Shown here: positions 1-46,633 of the stretch, piece by piece
Layout of the letters: the number at the start of each line of letters is the position of its first letter
How positions within the stretch are numbered: the first letter of the stretch is position 1
The notes under the pieces: model-generated
Databases searched by the model: none
Told to the model about the DNA's origin: nothing
The model's input: the letters and a program-made list of their open reading frames with translations, nothing else
Assembly: GCA_900088475.1 (NCBI GenBank)
Contig: FLMG01004374.1
Coordinates: 62,001 to 126,000 of the forward strand
Reading direction: 5' to 3'
Origin: Hyphochytrium catenoides
Lineage: Eukaryota > Protista > Hyphochytriomycota
Length of the DNA: 64,000 bases
Made by a program: the position numbers and the translations under genes

Positions 1-1050
1 AGGAGATGATGACGGTGGTGAGGCAGTCATGAAAGAACGACGACTGTTAGTCATCTCAGGTCTCAGTCAAGACTTGAAGGCACTGGTTCCTAGTGCTTCT
101 CCAATCATCAACCCACCAAGTCGTTGGTGCCCGGGTCGGAACCACAATAGACAAGATCGGTCACCGTATAGAACTGGGCCAACTATAGAACTAAAGGACT
201 ACTTTCGAGGCGCTTGGTTGGTGGATACTGGCCGCCAACTTTTTTTGCTGATTTCTTGATAAATAGAAGCTGGTTCGCAAACCCCGAATTGGACGCATTA
301 CTTTATTCATAGTAGTCCACATCCGTGGGAAACCATTGAGAATGGCGAACTATTAATAGTCTTGAATGCTAAGAAAGAAGCACCAATCACAGGAAGACGG
401 AGCTATATACAGTTATACCGGAGGTATTATCTACAGGCCGTTGGCAACAAGTGAGCCTCATATCGTCGCTTTATGGTTAATTGCTGTTTTGGATATGGGC
501 ACGATTGGTCAGAATATTGTTGACTATGCTCAGCCAAGGAAGAGAATGCTTGACAGTATTATGACCTCGCCTGCCTAGGGATAAAGGCCCAATTACATAT
601 TGCTGTTCCGCGCACTACTACGAGAGAGGTATGGCGGCCACCGCACGGGTTGTGGGTGACAAGAGGTCAGCGCCAACCTTATAATAATCAGTGTGAAGAG
701 GGCCAGCTGCTGCCTGCTGATGATTGATCCCTGCCGTCCTTCCCTGCTGGGAAGAGTTTCGCCTTTGCCATTGAGACTGAGGGGGAAAGACGAAGGACAG
801 AGACCTTTCCCAGAGCTTGTTTCAGTTAAGTGAGAGGAGGCACTAGGAACCTCACTTTCCGGTGTAGCTTGTCGCGTCCGTGGGCAGTGCAGGGGCGGTG
901 CAATAGCATATCAAAACGTTCCGTCGCTGTCGAGTTGTTGAGCGCAAGACAGCCCTCCTCATGGAAGTTGAGACCCGATAAACTGACCGTAACGGACAAT
1001 CCTGATCCTCACTTAGAGTACTCGTGAGTGTCGCTACCTAGAGGGGAAGG

Positions 1051-4000
1051 ATGTGGTGGTGGCTGTGGCTCGGCCTCAAGACTGCGGTCATATGCAGTGT
1101 GATCGGTTCGGTCCTGGTCTTCTTTGCAGGACCGTTGCTGTCCTTAGCGCTGAGGTATTCCTTCTTGCTTTATCTGTGAGGCGTCGATACAGCAGGAAAC
1201 TAACAGCTGTACCATCTCAGCTTTGTGCCGAAGCAGTATTTGAAATCAAGACTGAAGATTCGCGTGGCGTGGAATAAAGGTCAGTTCTTCATAGCAAGCT
1301 CGGTGCTTCGTGACCAGCGACCTCGCTCACATCTTCTCCCCTGGTGCAGTATATTTCGCTCTCGAGGATCTCGATCTAGGGAAGGCAGTCCTCGGGATCA
1401 TCTCCCCCTTCGTGCCACTTCCTTTCTCCATTACAAGGCTGCGCCTTAAGCATGCGTCTATCTTGATACCTCTCGACGTGCTAAAAGGTGGCAGCATTAA
1501 GCTGAATGCCTCCGGTCTATCCGTGGACCTGGTATCTCATACCGAAGCCTATTGGAATCCTTCTCTGCTTCAGGTCTGAACTATGGTGGACTTTCAGCTC
1601 AGCGGGGTAAGCTAATTGACGCTTCACCTGCCATGATAGAACAAGGATCGCTTAGCGAAGGCTGTGGAGGCTGCAAGAGCAGCGAGAATCGCTGAGGCCA
1701 ATACCTGGTGGATGACCATTCTCCAGAAGTTAGATGGCATCGTAAGGATCTACCCACTTCTACCTTTCTATGGATTTAGTCCCACTCGTTTTATCTTCTA
1801 TATTTCTGTTATCTTACAAGCTTGATATTGTTAGGCGAAGAGCAACGATGTAATCAAAAAGTTTGAAAGTGAGCGGGCTGCGCAATTGAAGGCGGAGAAT
1901 CCAATCGCTGCTTGGAAGCGCACTCTGGACAGCATCATTGACAATCTCATGATTGAGAGTTCTGACATCAATATTAGATTGCTGGTAGCGAAGCAGTGCA
2001 CTCTGGGCATAGAACTAAACGGGTTCAGGTTCAATCAAGCGGAACTGAAGGAAGAGGTAACAACCAAAGGCCAAAGCCCTCTCTCGTTTTTGATACGCCT
2101 TATTGCTGACGCGATCCCCATCCAGACAACTGTACGCAAGCGGGAGATTGAGATAGACGGTTTCTCTATGTACGTAGACGTTGATGCGGTGGTCCTAGAA
2201 AACGTGGAGCCGGAAAGTACGACGGTAGGAATGTCATCAGCTCTGCTCATTCCGCGTATCATTGTTAAGCCCATCTCTGTTCTCTTGTCGTTACATTAAC
2301 AGCAAGAGTTGGATCTTGGTCTGTACACCTCAAACAACGAAAAAGTCAATGCAGCCGAACTCCGTCACGATCATGTCATCGACAACCTTACCTTTTCTCT
2401 CGTTTTGGAGCTTCCGCCAGTGATGCAGGGCATTCTGCTTCCCCAATATCTGGTTGGCGGTCTTTCCCCTCCGGTGCTAAAGCTTGTGAAGGTTCTTATC
2501 GTATTTGAGAATGCCTGTTTGGGCATCAGTCCCGACATAGTGAGAGGTCTGTTCGGCCTGTTGGATAGACTCAATGGCTATTATAAGTGGACTGGACATG
2601 CTAAGGTCAAGGATGAGGCCGGTATCCTCTCCCTGACAGAGGATGAGAAGAAACAGTATAGACAAAGGTCTGTGTCCAGCTTTTACTCTGTGCGGTAGAT
2701 GTGCTTTGGGTGTCGAAGCGCTGACAATCACTCTACTCTACTGTCCGTCAGCTATGCCACGCTTGATGATAAGAAGGCTTCAAAGTCGAGGAAAGCGGAA
2801 AGTAAGAAAATTGTGGATGAACTGGAAGCGAGGATGGAACCTAAAGAGATTCTGAGACTGAGAGTGGCGGCAAAAGCGCTACAGATCCCGTCTGGTGGAG
2901 AGAAGGTGGAGTCGATCCCTGAGCAGCGAAAGCTTGACGCGGATCTATCAGAGCTCATTGCCAAGCCCATCTCGTACGGTGACTACCGCTTAGTCGTCTT
3001 CCTCAACCCCCGATCCAAACACACACACACACACCAACACACACACACACAATTCACCCACCGCTCTTTGGCATCGGTGTTGCACATTCTTCTTACAAAG
3101 GCCGAAGCGGCAGATCTTCAGACTGGCTTTTCGTTTAGAGCTGTACAATGTTGTTTACCTACTTGGTTCTGTTGACGTAGCTACGTCAGCTAGCACGTTA
3201 TTCTATCTTCTTCCCGCGATCAGTGACAATGGCTAACATCCATCTGCAGATTCTATGCCCCATCATTGAAGCCCGTTGATGATGAGAATCTGCCTGTCAG
3301 GACAGTCTCGGTGCACATCTCAGTCAAGAGATTTCTTTTCAAGTTGAGAGGACATCATCAAACCTCGTTGGTGAACATGGGTGCAAAGGATCTAGAGCTA
3401 TCCCTTGCTGCGGCACTTTATGAGGTCAAGGGCGATACTCCCTCGATTATCCTAAGCCTGTCACTTTATCGCTTTTACATTGTCGACAGGTAAGAAAGAT
3501 GATGCACTACTATCTTATGTCTTCTGCGCTGGTCCCGTACGACTTTCATCAAGAACCATATCTGTTACTAAATACCCTTCCAGCAGCCTAAACTACTACT
3601 ACAGTTTCCGTCACTGCGCTTTTCCACTGCCTTAGCATCTATATTCCCTTGCTTCGAAGCCATAATGTACCGTTTCTTTCTCAGTCTCTCTGATTAAGTG
3701 TGGCTTGTGCTAATGTCTCGTTTGCCTACAGCCGGGAGCCAGCTCAGAACGCAATAACTAGCATATTTGACATTAATCCGGGGTGCAAGCAAATGCTGAA
3801 TGTGGACCTTAAGATACTCGGTGACGGCTTCATCGAAGGCAATGTAGACGCGCAGGATTTTTCCATTGTGGGTAACGTGGAACCCCTTATCGTCCTATCA
3901 AAAATCTATATGGCCGCGATGATATCGGCAGAGGACGAGCAGTCCATAGCAGCACCCACTGAGACCGTTGTGGCAAAGAAACCTGTCATTGTCTTCGTAA

Positions 4001-7000
4001 AGGACCTACCACAGGACTATTCTCCACTTTTCCTTGGCTCGGTACCGATGGATTTCACGTTAACAGTAAGAGATGTTGAGCTCATTAGCGCTGTTGATTA
4101 CACGTAAGTGTCCGGCGTTGCCTTCCTCATCTGCAGATCCTCCTTCAGCTCTACTAGAGCCTCCCTTCCTGCCGCTTGTTCGAACATTCGACACGGAGGG
4201 TCCACAAAGATGCCTCCAGGACCTTCAAAGATAACCTATCGTCTGCTCTCTATCCCAACGATGCTAACTTGAAACCTTCCGCATGGTGTCTTTGCCCAAC
4301 GCCTTTCAGGGTGAAGCGGAGCCATACTATATCAATATCTTCCAACCTTTACATAGAGATCGAAAGTAGCAAGAATAAGGAAAAGATCTCTTTGCAGCTG
4401 GACGAGGTGGCGGTAGAACCGTGCAGCGTGGACGTAACTGACGAAGGCATCAGCCTGACAAGGCCAGAAATAAACCGAAGTCTTATTGAGATTACCGGAG
4501 CAGGTAAGGAGTGGTTGTTTCTCGGTATACAAAGGACGTCGGGAATATGAAGTTTCGCCAATTTTGAGAGATTATGATAAAGAATGCAGAATCGTGCAGG
4601 AAGGGCTTGGTTTGGGACCAGGGTTGATAGCGGATCGACGCCCGGCATAGTATGTTACCACAAGCATACCGCAATGGACGGAACAGCGGAATCCTTTGTA
4701 AGATGAAGCTTGGGAGTGAAGAATGACTTTTAAGAGGACAGCAAAGAGACTGCCAGACTGCCCTCTTACAGTGGAATCCACTTTCCAACATCCACAGGCA
4801 GCGGGCCAGACGTAGACATTGTGTACGAGTCACAGTTACTGGAGCCTTCCGAAGATCGCCCTAGCCTCCTCATCACCCGCAAGATCCCGGACAAGAGTCA
4901 AATGTCTCTCCACTCCCAAGGGCCGTCCGTAACAAACAGTCCCCAGTACTCCCGGTTGAGGCAAGGTTCTACCGCTGAATCGGATATTCCACCCAGCCCC
5001 GCACATAGCGCTATCTCTGAAAGGTTTGGCTCTGAATCTGGCTCTTTCATGGATGATGGACAAGGAGGCAGACAGAGTCTCGATTATATTATTGAGCCGC
5101 CAGGAGCGCAACGCTGCGTCTACCTGAAAGTCAAACTTTGTGCAATCAACCTCAGCAAGGACGATATTGCCCTCCTGCTTGCCATCTCCAACCGACTTTC
5201 GGCCTCCATAAGCGAGGACGAGAAAAGTCAACACGATGTGCAAGAGAAAGAGAAAGCCCGCGTTGCAGCGCAGAAGGAGAGAGAGATTAAGGCCAACCTT
5301 AAGAAGCTAGAGGACTCGTTCCGCTCTATCGATACGGACGGAATGGGCACCATCTCTGCTGACGAAGTACATGAGCTGCTCAAGGAGGTCATCAAACGAA
5401 GGCTGACACGATCTGAGATGGAGGAAACAATCAAAGAGTTCATGAGCCTTGTGGATGCCGATAACAGCGGAGACGTAACTCTTGAGGAGTTCATCTCTAA
5501 ATTGAACCCCGAAAAGACTGTCTTTCGACAGAAGCATGCAGGGCATATCCGTCTCACAGCGCAAGAGTATAAGGACCCTTTCTATACCAAGGACTTGGCG
5601 GTAAAGTTCAAGAGAGTGATGGAAGAGTATTCCTATGAAGAAATAGGTATCCAGAGTGATCCTAGCAAGTTCCTATGGCGACCAGATCTTCCTGTTCCCC
5701 AAGAAGTCAGTGGAACGACGAGCCCCTCTGCTATCTCTAGCGTAGCTTCTGGTGTCTCAAACGTGACGCGATCCGCGGTTACTACGATTGGTGGCCTTGG
5801 CAGTAGAGCCGGTGGAGCTTTGGGCTCTGCGGCGAATGCGGTCGGAAGTGTACGAGGTCTTTCTACGGTGACTGGAGTGGTGGGGTCCGTGGGTTCAGTA
5901 GCTGGTGCCGCTGTTGGAACTGTGGGGTCTGCTGTTGGCTCAGGTGTTGGAGCTGTTGGAGCCAAAGTCGCTGATGCAGCCTCGACGGTTGGCTCAGCCG
6001 CTGCTTCCCAGGCTACAGCTTTCAACGGTATGTTGATGGGAGGGTTATCAAACATCCAGACAGCGTTGGGGGAATTACCTGCCGCGCGCTCTAAAGCAGA
6101 AATCGACCAGAAGCTGAAGGAAGAACTACGACGCTTTTGGGAAATGTACATGACAGAGTGTGACACCTCTCTGGACTCTTTGAAAGGCCAGAAGCCGCAC
6201 ATTGTGCAGCAAAAGCTCATTCGCGTGTTCAGATCGAAGGACTTCGCTAAAGAGGCGTGGCAGTCCATCATAGCTCCCAACCTTCGGTCGAAGAAAGAAA
6301 GAGCTTCGTGGGTGATTAGGGACTCTGCCGTGGTACAAGGGGTGACAGATATTCAAACGTTGCTAGAGAGGGTGACGGCGACAACTGGTACGGTTTTGGA
6401 AGCCGAGGAGGAGGGCAACTACCCTGATCCTGCACCGATGATTGTTCGCACGGACATAGAAACCGACCTGGGTGGTCTGCACCTCTGTTTGATTGACCCT
6501 CGGCTGCCTGCTGGCAAACCGGGTATTCGATTCTCCGCAACTGACATCAACGGACTCATATCATTCGCACTTTGGGAAGGCGGCACTCCTCTTGGGACCA
6601 AAGTCAAAGCCGCCGACCAGCTCTTCTATCCTCAGGATATTATCTCCTCCGACGTCTCGTTCTCCGTGCAGGGCGAATATTACAACTCTGGCGTAAAGGA
6701 GATGGAGCCTTTCCTAGAGCCCTACGCTGGTAAGAGTGCCTAATAGTGTTCTAGAGTTGACTCGAAGAGAGAGTTCGTTCGGTGATCACAGGAACTTCAA
6801 CTCGTGTCACTCCTCTGATATTGTTTTGCGCTCTCTGAAGGCGGGCGGGTCATGCTCCTGCTAGTCACTCCTTTCTTTGAGGATCTGTTGCCCGTCTTAC
6901 CTCATACTTCCACTACTAATCAGCCTTTGTGGGTGCCTCTCAGGTGAGCTATCAGTCTACAAGGAGCCACAGATGCCTCTCCATGTGGAGTTCCTNNNNN

Positions 7001-10000
7001 NNNNNNNNNNNNNNNNNNNNNNNNNNNNNNNNNNNNNNNNNNNNNNNNNNNNNCTTGAGTCTTTCGGGAAGCTGGATGCAAAGAAGAAGGAGAGGGAACA
7101 CATTACGGACTTAGGTGGACTTTTTTGGATAAACAACCAGTCTGGGAGTCCCGTTGAGTGCAGCATCACTTCCTTACAAGCTGACACCGGTTCATCTCTT
7201 CAAGCTCCCATAAGGGTCCCAGATATGAGTTGGGAACCTTGCATAGTCCACGATGAGGCGCTCATACTGCAGCAGCTGCAACAAGAACAAAGCAGAAGAA
7301 AGGATCTGGCCGAAGCATTTCATAGCGCAGATGAAGATGGTAGTGGAATCCTGGATTCGGAGGAGATCCGCGCTCTTATTATTGATGTCTTTAAGAAGAA
7401 AGGCGTCACGCAGGATCAGTTAGAGAAGGAGGCAAGTGAGTTTATGAAGATTGCCGACACGGATGATAGCGGAACTGTCACATTAGAAGAGTTTCTGGTA
7501 GCCATTGAGAAAAGTGGCAAACAAGCTCGAAGGACTCTGACGTTAAACGTGGAGGGTTATGAGCCTGTCACGAGCATCCCAATCGATACGCTTGACGTGA
7601 AGGTCTACGAGCTTGTCCCGAAACTTCCCTTCAGGCTTACTGGAGCGGAGAGTGCAGTTGATCTCTACGAAATGGCTAAGGAGCTGTATACAAGGCAGCC
7701 ACCATCTGCTGCCGCTCTGGCGCAGGCCTATGGCCTATTCCGCATGTCCGAGGCCAAAGATTCTCAGAGCTATGGACGAATCAAGGGCTATCTTGAGCGT
7801 TGCCTGGAGAATCATATTCCCGTGCGTATGGCTATCCACATTGATTCAGACTCTATGTTTGGTCTCACTGTCCATATCCGGTCTAACTATCGGCTGAGGA
7901 ACTCAACTTCCAGGACGACGGAAGTGATGTTCTATGATAACGATAGGCAGGCGGTGGTAGCCCACACTGCTAACGGGGGAGAGCCTCTACGTTTCATATC
8001 CCTTAAGAGAAACGAGGAAATAGCCGTACCTATCCCTCTCGTGAACCGCGGCTACTTTGCTGTAAGGCAAGTGGGGGAAACAGACTGGAGCAACCAATTA
8101 GAAATAACCACTGCAATGGTCGAGGAAAAGGAGGCACTCGCAAAGCTGGGAAAGAAAAGAACAGCAAAGGCCCGTGTGGAGGAGATCCTCACCTTCCCGT
8201 TGAAAGCGCGCATTGATGATCAACCTCTTAAGGTGGTACGGGAGCGTGTGTCGAACCAAGATCACTGCTTTGACTATCAGCTGAACCTCCTGCCTCAATT
8301 TCTCTTCCAAAACTCCTTACCATGTACGATCGAGTACAAGATTGTCCAGCCTAATGATAACTTCGAGACTGAATCCGGCGGCTCAGGTAGGGGTTCTCCC
8401 GGTCGGAGCCATATCCAAAGGCTCTTCGACACTGTAACAGAGGTGAATGCACGCCGTGGGTTTATAGAATCAGGCCATACAGCTCAGATTTCAGGCCTGG
8501 ACATGAATGAGGATGCCATGCTCAGAGTCCGGCTCATCAGTAACTTTTCCGCCGGCGATTCTTCTACAACGGCAGAAGCTCAGCGAAATAACCCTGCTAC
8601 TGCCTGGTCAGACAACATCGTAGTGCCACTGCTGAAGCACGCCAAGAAGTTTACCAGCGAGAACTTGACGGTGAAGCTGAATCATGGAGTAGACTTTGAG
8701 CTAGTCCCAAGTTGGTACCAGGACCACNNNNNNNNNNNNNNNNNNNNNNNNNNNNNNNNNNNNNNNNNNNNNNNNNNNNNNNNNNNNNNNNNNNNNNNNN
8801 NNNNNNNNCCCGAGTCCCGGTACTTCAGCACCTGACCGTTCAGAGCGTAATGGCAGCAACCCACCTGGTGTGACAGTAGACTGGCTCTCCACGCTAAGTC
8901 CCCGATGTGAGACTAGCATCACAGAACCTAAGCCCGGTTGGTCACACGGGCTGGATATTATGACGTGAGTTCGACCTTGCTCTATTACAATCCTGCGCGA
9001 TACCACTGAACGTGTTTGAGGCGATCCCTGCCTTCGTTATCCTTTTTGCGTCTTCTATATCCCGCAAATTCCCTTCTGCGACATTTCTCACTCTCTTTAG
9101 TAATCTTCCTTACCTCGTCCGCTCGTCCCCCGACTTACTTCACTACCTTTCAACAGGATTGGACGCCCAGGGATAATAGAAGAGGTAGGGTTCTACAACC
9201 TTGCCTATGAGGTTGACGTTGCAGCCTCCCAGTATTTCCGGACAAAGGTCATCACCATACAGCCACGATATGTACTCCACAACCATACAAAACGAACCCT
9301 GGAGCTACTTCCTCTGAACATAGACAAGAAGGGTGAAGGGTTGGACTTTGAGGACCCCAAGGTCCAAAAGAAGTACAAGATAAAGCAATGTCTAGTCAAG
9401 GAACAAGAGAGTGCTGTGATCTACCAGTTTTATGGACACAACTGTGACAAGGGCAAGGCGATCAAGATTAGGGATATAGAGGAAAACGGCGGTACGTGAA
9501 TTATCTGTCCGCTCAAATGGTCTCCATCATGCTTCTCCGTCAGTGGAATGTTCTAACCTCTGGGCTCTCTTAAAAATAGCTTGAATTTCTCTTCTAGCCC
9601 ATAGCTCTCAGCTTACATTGGTCTAACTGCCCTTCGATGACTTTCTTCCTTATCAGATGCGAGTGGTTGGTCTCAGATGCTGTCTGTGGACAGTGACCGT
9701 GACTACTTCATATGGAGTCGGGGCATCCAGGGCGAGGGGCCACTCCTCTCTGTCGGCATCACTCAGCGAGGGCCTTCTACCTTCATCACCATCACGGACG
9801 CCACGGCCACTCCACCGTTCCGCATAGACAATAGGTAGGAGGAGGTTACATCTCCATCTCTGTCTTGTTTCTGTCAAGTTTGGCTCATTAGGTCGAGACA
9901 CATATATGATTTGGTAGAGTTCAGCTTTCTCTCATTGTGCCGGTCAGCCTGCATTGTGGATTCTATCTTCTTTAGGTTCATCGAACTCATATCACCCCAT

Positions 10001-13000
10001 TATGAAACTTCTTCACCATCCCTCTTTCGTCTGTAAGGTCCACGAAGCACACGATTCGGTTCCGTCAAGCTGACCTTCCTGACGCGACTGAGTGCACTCT
10101 GGGCCCGGTGCGGTGGAGCTCCTTTACTTGGGAGAGGTTCACTCGTAGTTCTGATGATCAGATGGAGCTGGAGGTGACCATCGGAACAGCACCTTCCTTC
10201 AGGGTGAAGCTCAGCCAAGTTCAAAACCTCAAGCCGTTGTCGCCAGATGGTGAGCCGTCAAACATTGGGTTTAGGCGAGGATAGTTGCCTATTAAGGGCA
10301 TTGTATCTGCCATTAGACTAGTCGGCGCAGGCTAGAGAAGGGCCAAGGAGGCGGCTATCTTATGCCTCGTTTGTGCGCTCCCTTTTTCACCTCTTCAGAG
10401 GCCCACTTCTCTCATTAGAGTACCTTCCCGTTTTAACCCTTTACCTCCGTCTCTCAATTATTTCTCCTCCCTTCCAACTTGTCCTGTCCAGGAGGTCAAA
10501 CCCGCGTCTTTGGAGAGGTCTACGTACAAAATAGCACCCGCGTGCTCTCCTTCTCGGATGCCGAGCTCAATCATTCAGACATTGCGAAGTTTAGAAAAGG
10601 GTACGCCCCCGTCATTGGCGATTGCAATCGGTCTATCATCCAAATATGCCCAAAGCCGCACCTTTGCTTCACCTCTCTTGCTCTTCGGTGGCAAGGAGAG
10701 CACTTACCCTCCTGCTTTCCTGAATCTCAACTTAAGGTTGCATATACTAATCAACTTGCCTTCAATTTCTACCTCCTTCGGCAGATTTCTCTCTTCGATT
10801 GTCTTTGACTTTCGTCTGCTGGGCTCCACCATTACGCTCATCGATTCCTCGCCTCGCGAGCTTATGGCAATCTACGTGGAGGACGTGGCCTTGTGTTCTC
10901 CTGAGCGCTCTCGGGAGATAAGTTTCAAAATCCATCACGTGGAGATCAGTAAGTACCATCTTTGATGCAAACGACATTCATGAAGGGCCATGGACTAAAT
11001 GAACATGGCAAAGAGGGTTCAGGAGGTGTGAAAGGAATATAGGGTATCTGAGGAGGGATGCAGGGCTAAGTAGCATCTCTGACCTGTCCTCGCTGGCTCC
11101 AAGTTGTCTTCATTATTCTCCCTTGCTTTGCTGTCTGATGTGTGTTGAGGTCCCATGCCTAAACCGAGTAATCGGACTGGCAATGTGAAGAGCTTTTTAG
11201 TTTTAAGTTCCACGTTTTCCTTCATGTTCTAATTGCTCTGACTAACTAACTCTCCTATGTCTCCTTCTCCAGATGACATGACTGTATCGAGCGAGTATCC
11301 TGTCGTCTTCGTCCCGACCGACACTGGATATCGCAGTGACAGGCACGAGGACTGGAAACCTGAAAAAGGAGAGAAGCCTTTCTTCATCTTTTTGCTGGAT
11401 ACTGAGCCAAGCGAAGGTCCGCCGTCTCCTTCCTTTATCTCCCTCCTCCCATCTCTAGGTGTTAGCTCGTCCTTTCCACCTCAACGCCGTTCATTCAGTA
11501 CTCTGACTTATCGGGCTAAACAACTTCTACTCGTCCTCCTCGATTAGGCATTATGATTATCAAACAGTGCGCCCTGGGAATGGGCAACATGCTGTGCCAA
11601 ATCAATGCGGATTATTTGCTCGTCGTCGCGTTTATGTTCATGAGGATGATTCCTGAGTCGGACCCTGAGCAAGACATTATCAACGGTAGGAGGACTTGTG
11701 ATGGCAGGGGAAGAGAAGGATAGAGTCCCATTAGTTAGCTCAAACTCTCGCCGTCCCTGACATTCACCCCTAGCTCTCTACCCGATTATTAACCGCCCTC
11801 CTTCCCGTCTCCCTCTCTCTCTCTTGATTGTTGCATCAACGCTGAGAAATGGCTCGTGCTGATCACTGTCTCTTGGTTGACATCGGTTCCTTCTCTGCAG
11901 GGCAACTGGCCTGCCGCACCTCAGTGCTCAAGAAGATAGAGAAGATGCCTCCGCAAGGAAGTGGCGGATTGATCTTCCTGAGCCACATGATGGTCCAGCC
12001 CTTCGACTTCGACTTTGTCTTCGTCTCAGATCCAGAAAACAATCAATCTGGTATACTCACACTCCTCTTATTCTGCAGTCGGAAGGCTATCTCCATCCTT
12101 CACAAACCTTGTGCTGAACCTGACCAAGGCTTCTAGTCGACTGGACTCCGCGCATTGTAATGCTTCGTTACCAGTGTGCTTCGCCTTATTGTCCTATGCC
12201 CTCTCGCATTGACCCCTATGGAGTCACTCTAGCCTAACCGTTTTGCTGCTAACTATATAAACCTCAGGTCTTAAGCAAGTTCTGCCTGCTACACTGGCGA
12301 ACATGGTGGGAGGCATAGCACACATCACGCCTCGGTTCCACTTCCGTCCGATTGCCTACAAAAATCGCTTCTTCACGCCTGGAGAGCTGGCTTACGACGT
12401 CGTGATGACCATCGTCTACGAGGTGGTGGGGCAGTGGTACAAGGTGGTAGGCTCAGTCGAGATGCTTGGAGATCCTGTCGGCTTTGTCCAAGATGTGAGT
12501 CGTTTCGCGCTGTCCTTCCCTCCCAATCTCATCTTCTTAGTTGAGCTGTGTGTTCGGCATGAGTACTGTATGTCTAGTGGAGATTTCCCTTCTGGGATAA
12601 GAAAGGAAGGATGCCGATGTAGTACGAAGTTCCGCGGCACGCTGCCATGACCCACGATGTCATATACTATTATCGTTGACAAAGGCGGCCTCACCACTCC
12701 TCTGACGATGCCACACAGGTTGGACAAGGCTTGAGGCTTTTTGTACGGAAAACTGGGAAAGAACTGAAAGGGGAGAGCGAGAAGAAGGGCGAAGGGGCAA
12801 AGATCCTGATGCAGACTTTAGTTGGTGCCCCGTCTGTGATGATTGGGAAAGCGTCAAATGGCATGGGTAACATGCTCAAGCGCATGACTTTCTTTGAAAG
12901 CCAAGAGGCAGACATTAACCCCAAGCACCTTGGCCACGGACTCCTGCAAGGTGGAGAGGTAGGTGAAACTCAAGAGGCTCTGTTTTTTCCGACAGAGTGG

Positions 13001-14617
13001 AAGGTAGAGCGACGTTGGCGTTCTACCTGTACCTGCTTGGGCCGTGCATTGCAGCCCTAATTAATCCATCTTTCTCTCTCTATTGTGCCGCCAGATTTTT
13101 GTTAGATCTCTTGGCTATGGCGCTGCGTCACTTGTCCGCCATCCTATGGAAGGAGCGAAAGAGGATGGCGCTAAAGGAGCTTTCCTAGGCATCGGGAAAG
13201 GGGTAGTGACGCTCGTTGCCAGTCCTGTGGTCGGTATTCTAGGAGCTAGTGAGAAGGTCGCCCTTTCCATTGATAAGACGGTGCATCTGATGGATGAGCA
13301 GTTCTACGAGGTAAGACAACGAAGGAGCATTCCTACTGCTGCTTCTTGTCCTTCTATACTTCTGGCGGTTTAGTCTTTGGGCTTGAAGAGTGACTCGGGT
13401 TAATGCCTTTTTGTTGCTTTCTGTCTTCCTCCAAAGCTTTGTCAAGTCATGAGACCGATTATCTTTTTTGTTTCTCCAGGGTACCCGTCGGCCTGCCCGC
13501 CTTCTTCACGGCGATGCGAAGGCGGTGAAAGCGCTGGTGCAGACCAACATTATCACCAAGCTGGAAGTGTTTGTGTGGAAGGCTATTAAGATCAGCACTT
13601 CGACGGCCTGCAACCCTCGTGTCCGAATCTATCTTAAAGAGATTGTCGCTGGAGAAAAAGGCGAGGCGACAGAGAAAGGAAGCCTGATCGAGCGATATAA
13701 GACCCGCAAACTACGTCATACGACTAATCCAGAGTGGAATGAGGCCGTTACCTTTGACATTGTAAGCACGAATGTCGTGGTGGAGATCAAGGTCTTCGAT
13801 GAGCATCGCCTCCAACCCAAGGTATGAGCCGCTGTCCTTCGCTGTCATGAATGTCAGCTCCTTTATCGACTGAGGATCTTTGTGTTCACCATGGCCCCTT
13901 GCTGACCTCGCATTCGAATAACTCTGATCCTTGCTCGTATTTCTTCTCTGCGGTCAATAAACTAAGGTCTATCTATCGCTCTATCTCTACGCCTTTGAAT
14001 GTAATGCCTTTCAGTCTAAGTATCGCGCTACTTCTTATCTACGTCGCTGTCCACAGATTCTCCTAGGACAGATCTCCAAGCCTCTGAATGAGATCTACAA
14101 GGAAAATCAAGAGGGAGCCATCAGCGCTCTCAGCGAAGAAGAGAAGAACAGGGCTGTAGCTCTTGCCGTCAGCAAGGTTCACACGACCAAGAAAGAGAGG
14201 AAGAAGAGGACAGATTTCGCCACTCAGGTGCAAATCCGCAACTTTGTGGATAATTTGACCCACAAGAAACGTGAAGATGCGATGCCTCCCGTGACACCAG
14301 GAAGAATGGCGACGTCGGGCACTGACCTAAATACGCCACCCGCACCTACCCCTAGCAGCACGCGGACAACGCCAGTGTATGGGGGTCCAGGGTTCAGCTC
14401 TAACTCGCGGCGCGTGACTCAGAATAGCATCGCCACCCCTTCGATCGCTGACACCATTGGTTCAGACGAGGGCACTCTCTCAGGAGAAGTAGTGCAGGAA
14501 GTGCTATTGAACCACACCAATAGGGCACGACGGTACAGATTGGAGGATGAGAGAGGAGAAGCGGTGGAAGGCGAGCTGTTCGTGGCCTTTAGATACTTGA
14601 ACGACCTCAGGCGGTAG
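1051..14617 (+). CDS. VPS13: VPS13-family (bridge-like lipid transfer) protein, multi-exon, with N-terminal TM helix, two EF-hand pairs and a C-terminal C2 domain
   Basis: ATG 1051. Exons 1051-1154, 1221-1279 and 1350-1573 splice in frame to MWWWLWLGLKTAVICSVIGSVLVFFAGPLLSLALSFVPKQYLKSRLKIRVAWNKVYFALEDLDLGKAVL...LPFSITRLRLKHASILIPL (chorein-N-like). Later VPS13 signatures are EPFLEPY (~6710), QFLFQNSLPCTIEY, YFRTKVITIQPRYVLHNHT, PPPFRIDN, SPRELMAIYV, YPVVFVP, VGSVEMLGDPVGFV and HPMEGAKEDGAKGAFLGIGKGVVTLVASPVVG (ATG2_C-like). Stop at 14615-14617. Two N gaps and some internal exon borders are unresolved. Confidence 0.9.
3019..3051. repeat. Imperfect (CA)n microsatellite in a VPS13 intron
   Basis: acacacacacacaccaacacacacacacac seen directly. 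Confidence 0.9.
6996..7053. other. Assembly gap (N run) inside VPS13
   Basis: Run of n characters. Confidence 1.
8728..8808. other. Assembly gap (N run) inside VPS13
   Basis: Run of n characters. Confidence 1.
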
Positions 14618-15946: not shown

Positions 15947-18900
15947 ATGGAGAGCCAGCAAGTGACAAGGCGAGGACCGGTGGACACTTCGGTGACGGAC
16001 TATTCATCGCCCTCGCCACCGAGAGGGCAAAGTGGTGCAAAGATTGTTGAACACCAACTGGTATGAGATCTTTGGTTTTTGTTTCTAAGTAGTATCTTAT
16101 CTCATCGTTTTATCTTTGGGCTCCGATATTTTTGGGACTGCTGCAGTCTGGAGAGGAAGGCTATCTAGACCAGCTCTCGGTTTACCTTCCAAGTGTTCAA
16201 GGGATTGCTAGTTACGTCAGGAAAGGCCTGCAGGAGGTTGCTCCCATGAAAATTGGTGCGTTCCTTTGGCCTCTTCTGCCATCTACCCGCGTGCCTCCTT
16301 CCCACCTCCCTGTCCGCCCGCTCGCCCACGTGCCGCTTCGCTTACGTGCCCCTTCGCTTTAGCCCCAGCTGGTCGCCACTCTGGCCCCCAACTTTCCAAA
16401 CCGGTCTTCCCTACGGAGTATCTTCCTCTACTTCGCTCTACTGTCATCCGCACGTCTGTCAACGCCTCTCCTCTTCTTGGTCCTAACAGAACGCATCTCT
16501 CTGCCGACAGAGTCTCCAGGGCAGACTAGAGATACTGTGCTCTCGGTCCACCTCCAAAGAATCATTGACCCTCTTTCAAAGAGGGAAGAAGTCTTCTTGC
16601 ACATCTGCTATGCAGACGGGCTTCAAGTCTGGAACACGACGGATGTGGATCACATCAAAGAAGTCCTCTCTCTCCGCCAAGAGGCAGTGAAGATAGCCAA
16701 GTTTTTGCCTTATCCTACGCAAAGAGCAAAAACTTCGGAACAGCTGCATGACATCTGGAAAGCAGCACCTCTTCTCCTTTCAGTCGCTGCAGCCGAAAGT
16801 CGTACGGGGTCCGCTAAGGCCATCAGTGTATATTCTCTACCTGAGAACAGGTCTTAACATCTCTCCACTACATTATACTACCACTGCATGAGCTACCTCC
16901 TGGTTTACTCTACCTTGCCCCAAACAGATTTACCGGTCTCCTTATGCCTCAGTGTTGGATTGGTCACTTTGCCCGCCACCTCTCCATGGGATCTCTCTTC
17001 TCTTGCATTGTGATTCTCTCTCTTCCTTTGCTTTATACCGTGCTCAGAGTTTTGTGCATCTTCCAAGTACTTACCTCCTGTCGAATGGCCGCCACTCATC
17101 GCCCTATTTTCAAGGTACATTCATGAGCTACGGTTGCCCAGTGAGGTCCTAGGGCTTGAGGTAAACGGGTCAGCCCTCGTGGCGGTCCTGCGAGATCATA
17201 TCTATGTCTTTCGCTCTTGCAACCTAGAGATGGTAAACAAGCTTGATTGCGCTGCAAACAGTCGTAAGAACGTCATTGCGTCTCTAGGAAGCCGGTGGCT
17301 GGCCTATGCGACGGTCAAGGAACCGTTTCCAGCCGAAAATGGAGGCGACGGATTCCATCTTGAGGGGATGGCGCCTTCCTCTTCCTCTTCACCAACTAAT
17401 GGTGAAGAGAATGGGTTGAGCATCAAGGAGATGGCGCAGGGTGTAGCGAACTCCCTTTATTACCTAGGAAAGCTTGGCAAACAGCAGCTGGGAGGAGGGA
17501 AATCTAACCCCGTTCTTGGGGCAAAGGGACTCGTCGGAGTTGTCGACCCTATAAAAGGGAAGTGTATCTTCCACTTCGAGGCGCATGCTGCGCCTCTCTC
17601 TTCCCTTGCTTTCGACTCCTCTGGAGTTCTTGTAGCGGCGGCTCCCATAGAGGGTCAGACTATACACGTCTACCGTCTTCTCCCGCAGCCAGATAAGCAA
17701 TCCCAGCCCCGTCTCATTTATAGGCTCATTCGGGGCATAACGCACGCAAATATTCGTGTCCTTTCCTTCAGCGCCGACAGCAAGTGGTTGGCAGCACTAA
17801 CCTCAAACGGCACCGCCCACTTGTTTGCCATCAACCCCGCAGGAGGCCAGGTGGACGCTACATCGCATGTACCAGGCCTTGATGGACATGGTGGCTCGGC
17901 CGTACAGAAAGGTTTTTTTACCTCCATAGCATGGGATGCATGCCTCTTTTCCTTCTTCTGAGTATTTTCTCTAACTCTTGTCCCCTGGCCAAGCACTGGG
18001 GATTCGACCTAACAACACGCCCGATGTTTCTTTCCGTAGATCCAACGTTAAAAAGCATTATCGGCGAAAGGAAGAAAGAGATGGCTCTTCGCCTCTCTGC
18101 AGTTGGGAGATTCAGACATCAAGCAGTGTCATCGTGCATTGGACTTGATGCCATGACATCACCAGGGACCAGCCAAGCTGACGAAGCTATTGCTCCCACT
18201 CTCCCGTTGGCGCTATCCGGCATCTTCTGTGGGCGAGCTGTACTGGTTGCCAACCAAGCTGGCTCTATGTCTCTGTTCCAAGTGCGTCCGGCTGCAAGAA
18301 GGCAGGGAGACTCGACTTCATCCACCTCTGGAAAGGATGATTCCTCGGCTCATAAACTGGAACTTTTGAACTCCAAGAGACGTTTGTGGGATATGTGCCG
18401 TAGGCGCTCTTGGGGCGAAGTCAGATGCCGACAAAAGCTCATGCCAGGACTTACGTCCCCAGCCGTCGTCGGGGGTTTGTCTGAGAGCAAGGAATGGCTC
18501 CCAGTGGGAGAGATGACGCTCCACCCACCAGTTGTAGTCCCGCTTTGGATGCAGCCTCGCACTGCGTTTAGAGTCTACCGCCCGGCAGGTGGATATCTCC
18601 GTAATAGATCGAAGAGCTGTAACATTATCCCCCTCTATCTGGACGATGTGGCTACGGAGCCACTGAGGATCATGCGGACACTCACTGGGACTCCCCTGGG
18701 CATCACCGGTGCCGATGCCGACACCTCCGAGGCTCCTGTAGGAGGGCTGAATGCTTCTGGTCGCTTGATCTCACCCATGCTGCTAGCAATGAGCGAGAAA
18801 GAGGTTGAGATGCAAGCGCTACAACTCAGTCGTAAGTCCCCACATTCTCGCCCTTTGTTGCATCTTCTGAGTATCCCTCGAGTGGCGCTCTTGACCAAAA

Positions 18901-19447
18901 TTTAGTGTTCCTACATAACCATCTTCTCACTGTCATCTGACATGGCGTCTCTCATATATAGAAAGCATCTCCCTAGCCGTGTCTTCACCTCTCCAGTCAC
19001 GACGGACGGACATCAAGGAGATTCGTTGCGAGACACCCGAGGAGCAAAGCACAGAATGGCATCTTGGTGCCGCCAGTGGTAGGTTAATAGAAAGATCGGG
19101 GCAATTTTGCAACGCTAATACCTTTCTGCTTTGACGGCGATGCCTCCGCACTTCTCTCTTCCGCATCCTTTCACTCCGGCCACTACTACTACTCTTCCGC
19201 TTTTATGGCAGTGATAGCAGCAATGAAACAAGAGTACTTCTCCGTGGAGGGATCACAGGAGGAGTCCAGTCAATTGCAAGAAAGGGTAGAAGAGTCCTGC
19301 TTGGAGTCCGTGTGCTCCCCGTCGGCCCATCAGCCAGTAGAGTTAGATGCTACGGACATGATGTCTTCATCAGACGGTGCTGATGACTCCTTCCCAAGCT
19401 TCGAAGAGGGCTGCAACCGCTTATTCGTAGGAGAGGAAATCGTGTGA
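15947..19447 (+). CDS. BCAS3: BCAS3-like (ATG18/PROPPIN-related) WD40 beta-propeller protein, multi-exon
   Basis: ATG 15947 (MESQQVTRR). Motifs LHICYADGLQVWN, SLGSRWLAYA, HFEAHAAPLSSLAFDSSGVLV, YRLIRGITHANIRVLSFSADSKWLAALTSNGTAHLFAINPAGG and EWLPVGEMTLHPPVVVPLWMQP are typical of BCAS3 and plant ATG18f-h. The acidic tail ends at the stop at 19447. Confidence 0.85.
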
Positions 19448-28733: not shown

Positions 28734-29833
28734 TTATCGCGCAGCAGCGGGAATGCGAGAGAAGCCATTGATACGACAAAAAGGGTGCTGCATGTGAATA
28801 TCAGTGGGTTTCCTGCCATTCGTGGCGCCGTGCATGGCTTCAGAGTTGGCTAGGGACCCAAGTATAAAGGCCGTCAGCGCTTCATCACGACTAATGCCAC
28901 GGTCCATTTGAGGGACGAATGGCTCTTTCGCTGCACTCGGGGCGGCAAAGAAAGCTGACTCCGCCATAGCACCGATTGACTGGGTAATTTGTTGCTGCAG
29001 GAGAGTCAAATGCTTTACTGTGGGCAAGGTGACCATTTTCTTGTGTGAAACCTCTATCACTGGTTTCCCAGTGTCACGCCCAGAAAGCAGAGACGCACAT
29101 CGACCTGAACCAAACGCTGGCGGAAGTGGCGGTCCTTCCGCCTTCTCCATGATCATTGCAATGGGAGAGTCACTTCGATCGCTGTCATCCGTAGATTGGG
29201 AGGAAAGCGAAGAGTTGCGGCTAAGCCCTGGCTTGCATCTAGCTCCAGGAATCTGTCTTGGCAGCTCTTGGCTGGAACCCTCACTAGCTTTCTTGTTTGC
29301 GTCCTTTCCGACATTTCTTTTCTTGATGAGGCGAACTCTGTCTTTGTCACCACGAGTAAAGTTTTCACTGTAGTAGGTCGCGGGTTTGGACCCTGGGCGC
29401 TGAGCAAGGAAGCCATGATAGTTCAATTGCCTGGTGAAGCTGTGATACTTGCTGTCTGTTAGGATGTAAGGGAAACAGACGCGTCAGAAATGACCGAATG
29501 TGCTATTCCACGCACATGGCAGCACTCTTACGTTTGAAGTACTTGGGAAGGACCTCATTCTCCAGCCGAACACGGTCATGAATTTGAAATGCTCGCCCAT
29601 CTGAGTGGAGGTCAATAAAACGAGAGGTTAGGCCTTATGATGAGCTTATCTCAGAGGTCTACCGATACATCCTTACCTGCGGTCCATGAAAGAACGGAGC
29701 TATCCTCTGTATCTAGCATCTGGATTAAGCAACCCACGAAAGACCGTGGGGACGACATCCATAGCGCCCGGCCTTCTTTTGCCGTGCCGTCCTTTGAGAC
29801 GGCTGAGCGCTTATCTGGGAAGACGGAGGGCAT
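28734..29833 (-). CDS. HSF-type DNA-binding transcription factor (paralog A), 3 exons
   Basis: SFVGCLIQMLDTEDSSVLSWTA|DGRAFQIHDRVRLENEVLPKYFK|HSKYHSFTRQLNYHGF...ENFTRGDKDRVRLIKKR is an HSF DBD. Introns 29601-29676 and 29456-29531. Confidence 0.92.
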
Positions 29834-45286: not shown

Positions 45287-46633
45287 CTACCCCTGCCCAA
45301 AGAGACTGCGGGAGTCCTTCCCACTCCTGCCTGGTTGTTTTGGCAGTTCTGACGTAGTAGCTGGCCGTGAAGAGCTGGTTTTAGCCCCAGCAGCACTATT
45401 AGATTTCTGGGGTAGCATCATTGGCGTATTGATGACTGTATGCGAAGGATCCTTGGAAGCAGAAGTCCACGTTGGGGTTGCTCCAGGTTGCGCAGGAGGT
45501 GTCTGGATGGGGGTCTGCAGGACGAGTGTTGAGCGCCTCGAGTGATTCTTGGTCTTCGTTGGGAGCTTGTATCTATTTTCTGTCCTCCTTCGTGCGACAC
45601 GAATCGTCACTGCCACTACGCCAGCCACAAATATCAAAATCGCGGCAGCGCCAAGAACAAGGAGGTATAGAGGCATGTTTAAGTAGGGGACGTTCGTATT
45701 GGCAACCTCCTCAATCTTAGAGCCGGCGTTGGAACCCAAAGCCCCAGAGAATGTGGGGCTGGTGGTTGGGCTAGCGGTCGGACTTGCGGGACCGTTGACG
45801 TCAGACATTCCATACAGAGAGCGGATCGCCTGAACATCCTTTGCACTGAGTCCCTTCCTCTGCCCAATAACGCTTTGCTTGCTCTTATCTAGGGTGGTGA
45901 TGGAGTTCTTCTTTGTATCAATTGCGAAGGCCGTAGACCCATAGTGCATGACGGAGCCATAATCATAGTCGCCATAATAGTACGCGCCAGAGTTAACCTG
46001 GAAGTTGCTATAATAGTTGTCTTGAATATTCGACCGCTCCACGACGATGTAGTTGTCCCTGTCTGGCCGCGTGTGCTCGTGCCACAGGCCGAGAGCATGA
46101 CTAATCTCGTGGATCATGTTGCCTTCAGAGCACGTTGCATCTACACTGACAGGTTGGCCAGGGCCCAATCCCACACCGGCAGGGTCGTTGACGTACCAGC
46201 CGGCCTTGTAACCTATGTAGGACCAGCAGCCACTTTGCTTCTGGAAGTGCAAAAAGTCGACCTTCTTGGCTGGTCCGCAGTCCGCGCACTCAATAAACTT
46301 GACGTCAGTCATAAACGACACGTGGGCGATGGCAGAGCGGACAAGATTTCCGTTTACTTCTGGAGAAATTTTGTAGGGAACTGTAGCATTGGGCCACGTT
46401 GCCTGGGCAAGGCCAGCCCCTGCATTCATCCTGAGACCAGCTTGCTGGGTATAAGCAATATCACCCTCAATAAGCGTGACGGTACCCTTGCTTTCCTCTG
46501 TCTGGGATCCCTCACTCTCTGTCTGTGGGGAGGCAAAGAATCCATTGAATCGACGAAGATTAAGCTCAGCATCAGCTTCATCATCTTGGAGCTGACGATA
46601 CCAGCCGCGTAATCTCCGCATCCTTGCGTCCAA
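45287..46633 (-). CDS. Astacin-family (M12A) zinc metalloprotease with a C-terminal TM anchor; 5' end uncertain (may extend to ~46930)
   Basis: Prodomain IEGDI; WPNATVPY; GCWSYIG; HEISHALGLWHEHTRPDRD zinc motif (HExxHxxGxxH at 46079-46111); YDYGSVMHY Met-turn; IGQRKGLSAKDV; Ser/Thr/Pro stalk; TM LYLLVLGAAAILIFVAGVVAVTI; basic cytosolic tail. Confidence 0.93.
   Translation of the reverse strand: MDARMRRLRGWYRQLQDDEADAELNLRRFNGFFASPQTESEGSQTEESKGTVTLIEGDIAYTQQAGLRMNAGAGLAQATWPNATVPYKISPEVNGNLVRSAIAHVSFMTDVKFIECADCGPAKKVDFLHFQKQSGCWSYIGYKAGWYVNDPAGVGLGPGQPVSVDATCSEGNMIHEISHALGLWHEHTRPDRDNYIVVERSNIQDNYYSNFQVNSGAYYYGDYDYGSVMHYGSTAFAIDTKKNSITTLDKSKQSVIGQRKGLSAKDVQAIRSLYGMSDVNGPASPTASPTTSPTFSGALGSNAGSKIEEVANTNVPYLNMPLYLLVLGAAAILIFVAGVVAVTIRVARRRTENRYKLPTKTKNHSRRSTLVLQTPIQTPPAQPGATPTWTSASKDPSHTVINTPMMLPQKSNSAAGAKTSSSRPATTSELPKQPGRSGKDSRSLFGQG

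What the first reader, a model, noticed from the sequence alone, without database searches (positions are those of the whole stretch)
1051..1573. VPS13 that begins with a transmembrane/signal-anchor helix
Seen: the first exon, missed by the ORF track, encodes MWWWLWLGLKTAVICSVIGSVLVFFAGPLLSLALS and splices in frame into a chorein-N-like region. Established: characterised VPS13 and ATG2 proteins are peripheral and use adaptors such as FFAT-VAP, whereas an N-terminal TM anchor is typical of BLTP1/Csf1 and BLTP2/Hobbit. Inference: this is a hybrid architecture, a VPS13 with VAB and ATG2_C-like modules hard-wired into the donor (ER or plastid-ER) membrane.
Basis: partly seen in the sequence, partly recalled or inferred. 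Interest (0 to 1): 0.7.

Follow-up and report, generated by a model that had tools for sequence, protein, structure and literature searches.

The report
Membrane-anchored VPS13 lipid bridge
This protist gene encodes a giant VPS13-type lipid-transfer bridge that, unlike the studied yeast and animal ones, starts with a hydrophobic helix able to span a membrane; about 45 relatives whose starts I read (mostly water moulds) and two sister genes in the same genome start the same way, so it is a real, though not unprecedented, design.

Summary
ATG 1051 follows an in-frame TAG at 1039-1041. Exon 1 (1051-1154) encodes the quoted hydrophobic peptide and joins in frame, through 1221-1279 and 1350-1573 (not 1349), to a chorein-N region. 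No RNA run was listed, so support comes from comparison.

- **One gene:** a profile of oomycete orthologues matches the window collinearly from 1346 to the stop at 14615-14617.
- **Conserved start:** every orthologue start that I read begins with Met plus a hydrophobic segment just before the chorein-N helix. Two of these are single uninterrupted ORFs.
- **Paralogues:** two paralogues in this genome (contigs C2241 and C2997) have the same first exon, ending at the same AG|GT phase.
- **VPS13 membership:** the N-terminal profile hits the Vps13 crystal fragment 6cbc (E 3e-7; Foldseek 4e-15). VAB is found by Pfam. The C-terminal profile hits human VPS13C (E 3e-34). A C2 domain replaces the PH domain.

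Whether the helix truly spans a membrane, and which membrane, is untested. A cleaved signal peptide is the main rival.

It is not unprecedented: green-algal VPS13Y has a predicted N-terminal TM helix (PMC10683392). The scan had already noted this design on another piece of this genome (s1-338280, s1-338301).

The parts
1039..1041 (+). In-frame TAG four codons upstream of the start codon
   Evidence: Read directly from the sequence. It makes ATG 1051 the first possible start in this frame unless an unseen upstream exon splices in.
1051..1154 (+). Exon 1: Met, W-rich hydrophobic helix (predicted signal-anchor TM), and the first turn of the chorein-N helix (GPLLSLAL)
   Evidence: KD19 is 2.36; Eisenberg <H> is 0.75 with muH 0.21. 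It aligns from its Met to position 1 of the orthologue profile (weak, E 0.08, composition bias). Paralogue first exons end at the same AG|GT.
1155..1220 (+). Intron 1 (66 nt, GT..AG, CTAAC branch-like site)
   Evidence: The phase is conserved in paralogues L009 and L010.
1221..1279 (+). Exon 2: (S)FVPKQYLKSRLKIRVAWNK, the basic flank after the helix and the chorein-N 'WN.G' turn
   Evidence: Compare VWNGKVRLDNLEL of Vps13 6cbc. Paralogue L010 reads through the exon 2/3 junction without an intron.
1350..1573 (+). Exon 3: chorein-N beta strands (YFALEDLDLGKAVLG...AYWNPSLLQ)
   Evidence: Orthologue N-terminal profile E 5.8e-9, positions 58-132.
1640..2694 (+). Exons 4-6 (1640-1741, 1835-2224, 2303-2694): the rest of RBG1-2
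   Evidence: Orthologue profile E 2.7e-9, 1.5e-8 and 2e-15.
5301..5495 (+). First EF-hand pair
   Evidence: Pfam EF-hand_7 E 1e-9.
7300..7512 (+). Second EF-hand pair
   Evidence: Pfam EF-hand_7 E 5.3e-10.
7867..9443 (+). VAB (VPS13 adaptor-binding) domain, across at least two exons
   Evidence: Pfam PF25036 E 1.7e-7 and 7.9e-8, both above the curated cut-off.
12264..13322 (+). Last RBG and ATG_C-type region (three exons)
   Evidence: Orthologue profile E 8.5e-36, 9.3e-31 and 2.1e-26. The same profile region hits human VPS13C 3188-3573 at E 3.2e-34.
13558..13812 (+). C2 domain where VPS13A/C have a PH domain
   Evidence: Pfam C2 E 1.8e-9. The same placement is seen in orthologues.
1051..14617 (+). 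Whole gene, provisional 25-exon model of about 3,200 codons. It contains N runs at 6996-7053 and 8728-8808.
   Evidence: Collinear with the orthologue profile at positions 61-2674 of 2818. The C-terminal ...FRYLNDLRR plus stop aligns with the orthologue end.

Best explanation
The gene at 1051-14617 encodes a VPS13-family bridge-like lipid transfer protein. Its order of parts is: N-terminal hydrophobic helix, chorein-N/RBG groove, EF-hand pair, more groove, EF-hand pair, VAB, last RBG plus ATG_C-type helices, C2.

The first 22-28 residues most likely act as an uncleaved reverse signal-anchor. The very short uncharged N-terminus would face the lumen, and the basic flank and everything after it would face the cytosol. 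This would fix the lipid-entry mouth of the groove permanently on one membrane, most plausibly the ER, as in BLTP1/Csf1 and BLTP2/Hobbit, rather than recruiting it through FFAT-VAP.

The far end would dock on the partner membrane through the ATG_C helices, the C2 domain and VAB adaptors. The EF-hands offer a possible Ca2+ input.

Shown: the reading frame, its conservation, VPS13 membership, the hydrophobicity and the charge asymmetry. Inferred: actual membrane insertion, topology, which membrane, direction of lipid flow, and Ca2+ control.
For: Reading frame and conservation:
- The frame and splice sites were read directly.
- The gene is collinear with orthologues over the whole length.
- Orthologues from Saprolegnia, Aphanomyces, Albugo, Globisporangium, Phytophthora, Peronospora, Bremia, Plasmopara and others all begin Met + hydrophobic run + (F/Y)GD + chorein helix.
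- P0002 and P0003 are single uninterrupted ORFs with in-frame stops just upstream, so the start is not a splicing artefact.
- Two in-genome paralogues have homologous first exons (MTVVGALSQTALVTGLAGVGSFLFLMGPILSLLA...AITIALLLVMHGLLILFALMLSALV) that end at the same intron phase.
- Canonical VPS13 paralogues in the same genome start MLQQYL... and MVPYNILKK... without such a helix.

VPS13 membership:
- The N-terminal profile hits 6cbc at E 3.2e-7. Profile position 38 corresponds to Vps13 residue 6, so the hydrophobic run is an add-on in front of a normal VPS13 start.
- The AlphaFold2 model of orthologue residues 1-420 (pLDDT 78) has one helix over residues 2-34, then a beta groove.
- Its best Foldseek matches are Vps13 6cbc (4e-15), LPD-3/BLTP1 and Atg2.
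- VAB is found by Pfam, and the C-terminal profile matches VPS13C and VPS13A.

Helix properties:
- KD19 is 1.7-2.4, and Eisenberg <H> is 0.59-0.86 with a low hydrophobic moment. This is TM-like, not amphipathic.
- There are few or no basic residues before the helix and 2-5 after it.
- No FFAT-like core was found by a loose pattern in 12 orthologues or in the window (weak evidence).
Against: - There is no transcript evidence: no RNA run was listed.
- No dedicated TM or signal-peptide predictor was available.
- In some orthologues the run before GD is only about 13-19 residues (Bremia, Peronospora). That is signal-peptide length unless the following helix is counted.
- The window's helix carries Lys10 and has Pro where orthologues have Asp.
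- Pfam VPS13_N does not hit the window's N-terminal exons.
- The exon 1 match to the orthologue profile is not significant by itself (E 0.08).
- The structure model is of an orthologue, not of this protein.
- The identity of the anchoring membrane is a guess by analogy.
Confidence: 0.7

Rival explanations
1. The hydrophobic start is a cleaved ER signal peptide, so the mature protein would be lumenal or secreted rather than membrane-anchored with a cytosolic groove.
For: Several orthologues have short runs such as MLLLGSLVVFAAFGD or MWTLLLVLLLVLATAFIAYGD, with small residues (A.A) before the GD motif. These could score as signal peptides. No SignalP or DeepTMHMM run was possible.
Against: - There is no basic n-region, and the positive charges lie after the helix.
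- The hydrophobic run continues into the chorein helix: the model has a single helix over residues 2-34.
- Cleavage would put a 3,000-residue VPS13 with VAB, C2 and ATG_C modules, all known as cytosolic membrane-contact parts, inside the lumen. I know of no such case among BLTPs (own knowledge).
- In the window, in P0002 and in P0003 the run is 24-30 residues.
Confidence: 0.12
2. The helix is a true anchor but sits in another membrane (mitochondrial outer membrane signal-anchor, plasma membrane, or an endomembrane) rather than the ER.
For: A moderately hydrophobic N-terminal helix with a basic C-flank and almost no N-terminal extension is also the signature of mitochondrial outer-membrane signal-anchored proteins (own knowledge). 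Nothing here identifies the membrane.
Against: By analogy, the chorein-N end of VPS13 proteins and the TM helices of Hobbit and Tweek sit in the ER (PMC7613979). High hydrophobicity (<H> up to 0.86) favours the ER route. This is analogy only.
Confidence: 0.13
3. Exon 1 is a gene-model artefact. The real protein would start elsewhere, or the helix would be internal because an upstream exon exists.
For: There is no RNA evidence. An AG at 1040-1041 could in principle serve as an acceptor in frame. A few database models of orthologues carry N-terminal extensions (P0151, P0173, P0009, P0001).
Against: - An in-frame stop lies 12 nt upstream.
- There is no in-frame ATG in exons 2-3.
- The chorein helix itself begins inside exon 1.
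- Most of the orthologue models I read start exactly at the hydrophobic Met.
- Two intronless genes have upstream in-frame stops.
- Two paralogues have the same exon and in-frame stops within 20 codons upstream.
Confidence: 0.04

Closest known systems
VPS13A/C and yeast Vps13 (canonical VPS13)
   Same: Chorein-N start of the groove (6cbc E 3.2e-7, Foldseek 4e-15), a VAB domain, and a last-RBG/ATG_C region (VPS13C E 3.2e-34)..
   Different: A hydrophobic TM-length helix sits in front of the normal start. No FFAT-like core was found. Two EF-hand pairs are inserted. A C2 domain replaces the C-terminal PH domain. Pfam VPS13_N and VPS13_C models do not reach it.
VPS13Y of green algae (Leterme et al. 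2023, PMC10683392)
   Same: A VPS13 with a predicted N-terminal TM helix followed by chorein-N, with C2 domains added. It is the only published TM-bearing VPS13 class that I found.
   Different: VPS13Y is described as TM-Chorein-VAB-C2-C2-ATG2_C-PH and as restricted to Viridiplantae. Here there is a single C2 after the ATG_C region, no PH, two EF-hand pairs, and a stramenopile distribution. Sequence relatedness to VPS13Y was not tested.
BLTP1 (Csf1/Tweek/LPD-3) and BLTP2 (Hobbit/Fmp27)
   Same: An N-terminal TM helix runs straight into RBG1 and anchors the bridge in the ER (PMC7613979). LPD-3 (9cap) is the third-best structural match of the N-terminal model.
   Different: Those families lack VAB. 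No Fmp27, Apt1 or Csf1 Pfam model hits this protein or its orthologues. The N-terminal and C-terminal profiles match VPS13, not BLTP1 or BLTP2.
Extended synaptotagmins / tricalbins
   Same: The same logic only: an ER membrane anchor at the N-terminus, a lipid-transfer module, and a C-terminal C2 domain that could bind the partner membrane in a Ca2+-dependent way.
   Different: A different lipid-transfer fold (SMP against RBG groove) and no homology. The comparison is from my own knowledge and from the discussion in PMC10683392.

Membership tests
VPS13 | Chorein-N / RBG1 at the N-terminal end of the groove | tested here: met
   The orthologue N-terminal profile (A1) hits Vps13 fragment 6cbc at E 3.2e-7. 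The AF2 model's best Foldseek hit is 6cbc at 4e-15. Window exons 3-6 match the orthologue profile at E 2e-15 to 1.5e-8. Pfam VPS13_N itself gives no hit on the window's exons.
VPS13 | VAB (adaptor-binding) repeats, which separate VPS13 from ATG2 and other BLTPs (PMC7613979) | tested here: met
   Pfam PF25036 on window:6865-8832 (E 1.7e-7) and window:9104-9496 (E 7.9e-8), both above the curated cut-off. Orthologues reach E 2.6e-23.
VPS13 | ATG_C-type region after the last RBG domains | tested here: met
   The orthologue C-terminal profile (A2) matches human VPS13C 3188-3573 at E 3.2e-34 and VPS13A at E 9.1e-26. Window exons 12264-13322 match that profile at E 3.5e-26 to 4.6e-36. A single window exon alone gives no PDB hit.
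VPS13 | C-terminal PH domain | tested here: not met
   No PH hit was found. A C2 domain occupies the C-terminal position in the window and in orthologues. Known VPS13 subfamilies also vary here (VPS13X lacks the PH domain, PMC7613979), so this does not exclude membership.
VPS13 | Peripheral N-terminus: an amphipathic first helix without a TM helix | tested here: not met
   Hydrophobic 21-mers have <H> 0.59-0.86 and muH 0.03-0.22, against <H> 0.20-0.39 for canonical paralogues. KD19 is 1.7-2.4 against 0.1-0.9.
BLTP1 (Csf1/Tweek) / BLTP2 (Hobbit/Fmp27) | N-terminal TM helix leading directly into RBG1 | tested here: met
   Met as a prediction only. The AF2 model has one helix over residues 2-34 followed by beta strands, with supporting hydrophobicity and flank charges.
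BLTP1 (Csf1/Tweek) / BLTP2 (Hobbit/Fmp27) | Family-specific sequence domains and absence of VAB | tested here: not met
   No Fmp27, Apt1 or Csf1 Pfam hits on window exons or full orthologues. VAB is present.
VPS13Y (Viridiplantae) | Predicted N-terminal TM helix before chorein-N | tested here: met
   As in the BLTP1/BLTP2 row. The feature is defined in PMC10683392.
VPS13Y (Viridiplantae) | Two tandem C2 domains between VAB and ATG2_C, and a C-terminal PH domain | tested here: not met
   Only one C2 is found, after the ATG_C-type region, and there is no PH.
VPS13Y (Viridiplantae) | Falls in the same clade as VPS13Y sequences in a phylogeny | not tested

The most novel reading that the evidence does not exclude
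Oomycetes and their relatives share an undescribed class of VPS13 that is an integral ER membrane protein and works as a Ca2+-controlled ER-to-plasma-membrane (or other organelle) lipid conduit. It would combine a BLTP1/2-style anchor, built-in EF-hand sensors and an E-Syt-style terminal C2 on a VPS13 chassis. It would have arisen independently of green-algal VPS13Y, making N-terminal TM anchoring a recurrent solution in bridge-like lipid transfer proteins.
Probability: 0.35. Interest if true: 0.7.

Novelty: new variant of a known kind. Interest (0 to 1): 0.55.

Why it matters
How the ends of bridge-like lipid transfer proteins are held on membranes decides the direction and place of bulk lipid flow. 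The studied VPS13 proteins are recruited reversibly, through FFAT-VAP and adaptors, whereas Hobbit and Tweek are fixed by a TM helix.

A VPS13 that is fixed in this way, and that also carries EF-hands and a terminal C2, would be a natural experiment on what permanent anchoring and Ca2+ sensing add to a VPS13. The family is present in every oomycete group that my searches returned, including transformable Phytophthora and Aphanomyces species, so the idea can be tested at the bench. It also warns annotators that these genes are currently labelled 'EF-hand domain-containing' or 'hypothetical'.

Tried and rejected
- **RNA evidence:** The look-up of sequencing runs listed no run, so read laying was not used and no 5' end or splice junction could be checked.
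- **Pfam on N-terminal exons:** nothing, even at E<=10. The six-frame VPS13_N search of the genome found at least seven other loci but not this gene.
- **Single window exons against PDB sequences:** no hits. Homology to solved VPS13 structures is seen only through orthologue profiles.
- **My crude exon-chaining model:** it chose donors 1176 and 1532 and ran on into the neighbouring BCAS3-like gene. Orthologue and paralogue comparison rejected those choices in favour of 1155, 1574 and the stop at 14615.
- **The joined (spliced) protein:** it was never given to any search, family scan or fold tool. All searches were exon by exon or on database orthologues. Exons were joined only inside a local script, to count length and frame.
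- **FFAT scan:** a loose pattern found nothing. I treat this as weak evidence.
- **Plastid-ER reading:** rejected as unsupported, because all named relatives are from oomycetes.
- **Literature searches:** four searches found no description of this stramenopile family, but did find VPS13Y.

Full report
**What is in the sequence**

The window is eukaryotic, with 50% G+C and short GT..AG introns. It is G000:C3141:62001-126000 of a 61-Mb assembly.

ATG 1051 has A at -3 and is preceded by an in-frame TAG at 1039-1041. Codons 1051-1152 read MWWWLWLGLKTAVICSVIGSVLVFFAGPLLSLAL. Without splicing the frame stops at 1177, which is why the ORF list lacks it.

Splicing 1154|1155...1220|1221 gives ...LALS-FVPKQYLKSRLKIRVAWNK. 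Exon 2 ends at 1279 and exon 3 runs 1350-1573.

**Is the gene model right?**

No RNA run was listed, so I relied on comparison.

A search of 1.8 billion representative proteins with the exon piece window:7054-8709 found a small family of 2,800-3,000-residue proteins at 33-36% identity. The named members come from Saprolegnia, Aphanomyces, Albugo and Globisporangium. Word searches added Phytophthora, Peronospora, Bremia, Plasmopara, Pythium, Lagenidium and others.

A profile of six full-length members matches stop-free stretches of the window in strict order, from 1346 to 13821 (profile positions 61-2674 of 2818). The last exon ends ...FRYLNDLRR-stop at 14615-14617, aligned end-to-end with the orthologue C-terminus. 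This is therefore one gene, 1051-14617. My provisional model has 25 exons and about 3,200 codons. Several long 'introns' may still hide small exons, and two N runs (6996-7053, 8728-8808) lie inside the gene.

I joined exons only in a local script, to count the frame. The joined protein was not searched or folded anywhere.

An N-terminal orthologue profile supports exons 3-6 (E 2e-15 to 1.5e-8) and places the exon 3/4 junction at 1573/1640. Spacing to the conserved Trp favours donor 1155 over the alternative at 1176.

**Is the hydrophobic start real?**

Every orthologue start that I read begins with Met, a hydrophobic and often Trp-rich run, then (F/Y)GD and the chorein helix. An example is MWWLLLWLWAIGVGAAVAFAAFGDVVLTALLR. 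Four database models carry extra N-terminal residues and look mis-started.

Two members (P0002, P0003) are single uninterrupted ORFs with in-frame stops a few codons upstream, so the arrangement does not depend on splice prediction.

The genome itself holds two paralogues of this subfamily, on C2241 and C2997. Their first exons encode MTVVGALSQTALVTGLAGVGSFLFLMGPILSLLA and MTLNTCVLRLARGGLYSFLDAITIALLLVMHGLLILFALMLSALV. Both end at AG|GT in the same phase as 1154|1155. The C2997 copy reads through the window's exon 2/3 junction without an intron.

By contrast, canonical VPS13 genes of the same genome start MLQQYLFSYLKHYLGAYV... and MVPYNILKKLLLGVLQEYLGAYV....

**Is it a VPS13?**

Pfam finds VAB on two window exons, above its cut-off. 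It also finds C2 near the end and two EF-hand pairs.

Pfam does not see the N-terminus. However, the orthologue N-terminal profile hits the Vps13 crystal fragment 6cbc at E 3.2e-7. Profile position 38 aligns to Vps13 residue 6, so the hydrophobic run is an extension in front of a normal VPS13 start.

An AlphaFold2 model of orthologue residues 1-420 (pLDDT 78) shows one helix over residues 2-34 followed by a beta groove. Its best structural matches are Vps13 6cbc (4e-15), LPD-3/BLTP1 and Atg2.

The C-terminal profile matches human VPS13C 3188-3573 (E 3.2e-34) and VPS13A. This region includes the ATG_C-type helices. The window matches that profile at E 3.5e-26 to 4.6e-36.

No PH domain is found; C2 takes its place.

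**Is the helix a membrane anchor?**

Kyte-Doolittle 19-residue means are 1.7-2.4. Eisenberg <H> is 0.59-0.86 with a low hydrophobic moment. The canonical paralogue starts give 0.1-0.9 and 0.20-0.39.

Basic residues are rare before the helix and frequent after it. In the window the counts are one Lys before and five Lys/Arg in the next 15 residues. By the positive-inside rule (established knowledge) this predicts N-out/C-in, a reverse signal-anchor with the groove in the cytosol.

I could not run a TM or signal-peptide predictor. Some orthologues have runs short enough to be called signal peptides, so cleavage remains the main rival.

Which membrane holds the anchor is unknown. The ER is proposed by analogy with the N-terminal ends of VPS13, Hobbit and Tweek (PMC7613979). 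No FFAT-like core was found (weak evidence).

**Comparison with what is known**

Levine (2022) lists TM helices only for Hobbit and Tweek, and takes VAB as the mark of VPS13. Leterme et al. (2023) described VPS13Y of green algae as TM-Chorein-VAB-C2-C2-ATG2_C-PH, with the TM helix predicted by TMHMM. A TM-bearing VPS13 is therefore already in the literature, as a prediction.

The family here differs in domain order (a single C2 after ATG_C, no PH), in its EF-hand pairs, and in its distribution. Four literature searches found no description of it. Databases label its members 'hypothetical', 'EF-hand domain-containing' or 'VPS13 C-terminal'.

The scan had already noted the same design on another piece of this genome (s1-338280, s1-338301). 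These are presumably the paralogues that I found independently. That note's mention of a diatom member was not checked here.

**Verdict**

The 'plastid-ER' option has no support. I class it as a new variant of a known kind.

Noticed in passing
window 5301-5495 and 7300-7512: Two EF-hand pairs are inserted in the VPS13-like protein, 41% identical to each other over 66 residues. Orthologues carry both. This is the subject of another note on this window (s1-371235).
   Followed up: partly
G000:C2241:32500-36500 (L009) and G000:C2997:199000-203000 (L010): Two paralogues of the same TM-start VPS13 subfamily lie in this genome. The C2997 copy has a 20-residue charged segment before its helix and lacks the window's intron 2.
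   Followed up: partly
window 6996-7053 and 8728-8808: Two runs of N (58 and 81 bases) lie inside the coding region of the gene. They are either gaps or withheld stretches.
   Followed up: no
window 16363-18902 (+): The next gene downstream encodes a BCAS3-type WD40/PROPPIN-like protein (Pfam BCAS3_WD40 E 9.1e-23). BCAS3 is linked to autophagy membranes, which makes it an interesting neighbour for a lipid bridge, but adjacency alone proves nothing.
   Followed up: no
window 45290-46663 (-): A long open frame encodes an astacin (M12A) metallopeptidase domain, E 3.5e-44.
   Followed up: no
window 50463-54035 (+): An uninterrupted 1,191-codon open frame has no Pfam match at E<=0.001.
   Followed up: no
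window 28737-29483 (-): An HSF-type DNA-binding domain, E 5.3e-6.
   Followed up: no
L011 (ERR4674102 contig) and L012 (SRR27418475 contig): The nearest non-oomycete-named relatives (P0002, P0003) sit on 41% G+C contigs as intronless 8.4-kb ORFs. The source organisms are unknown.
   Followed up: partly
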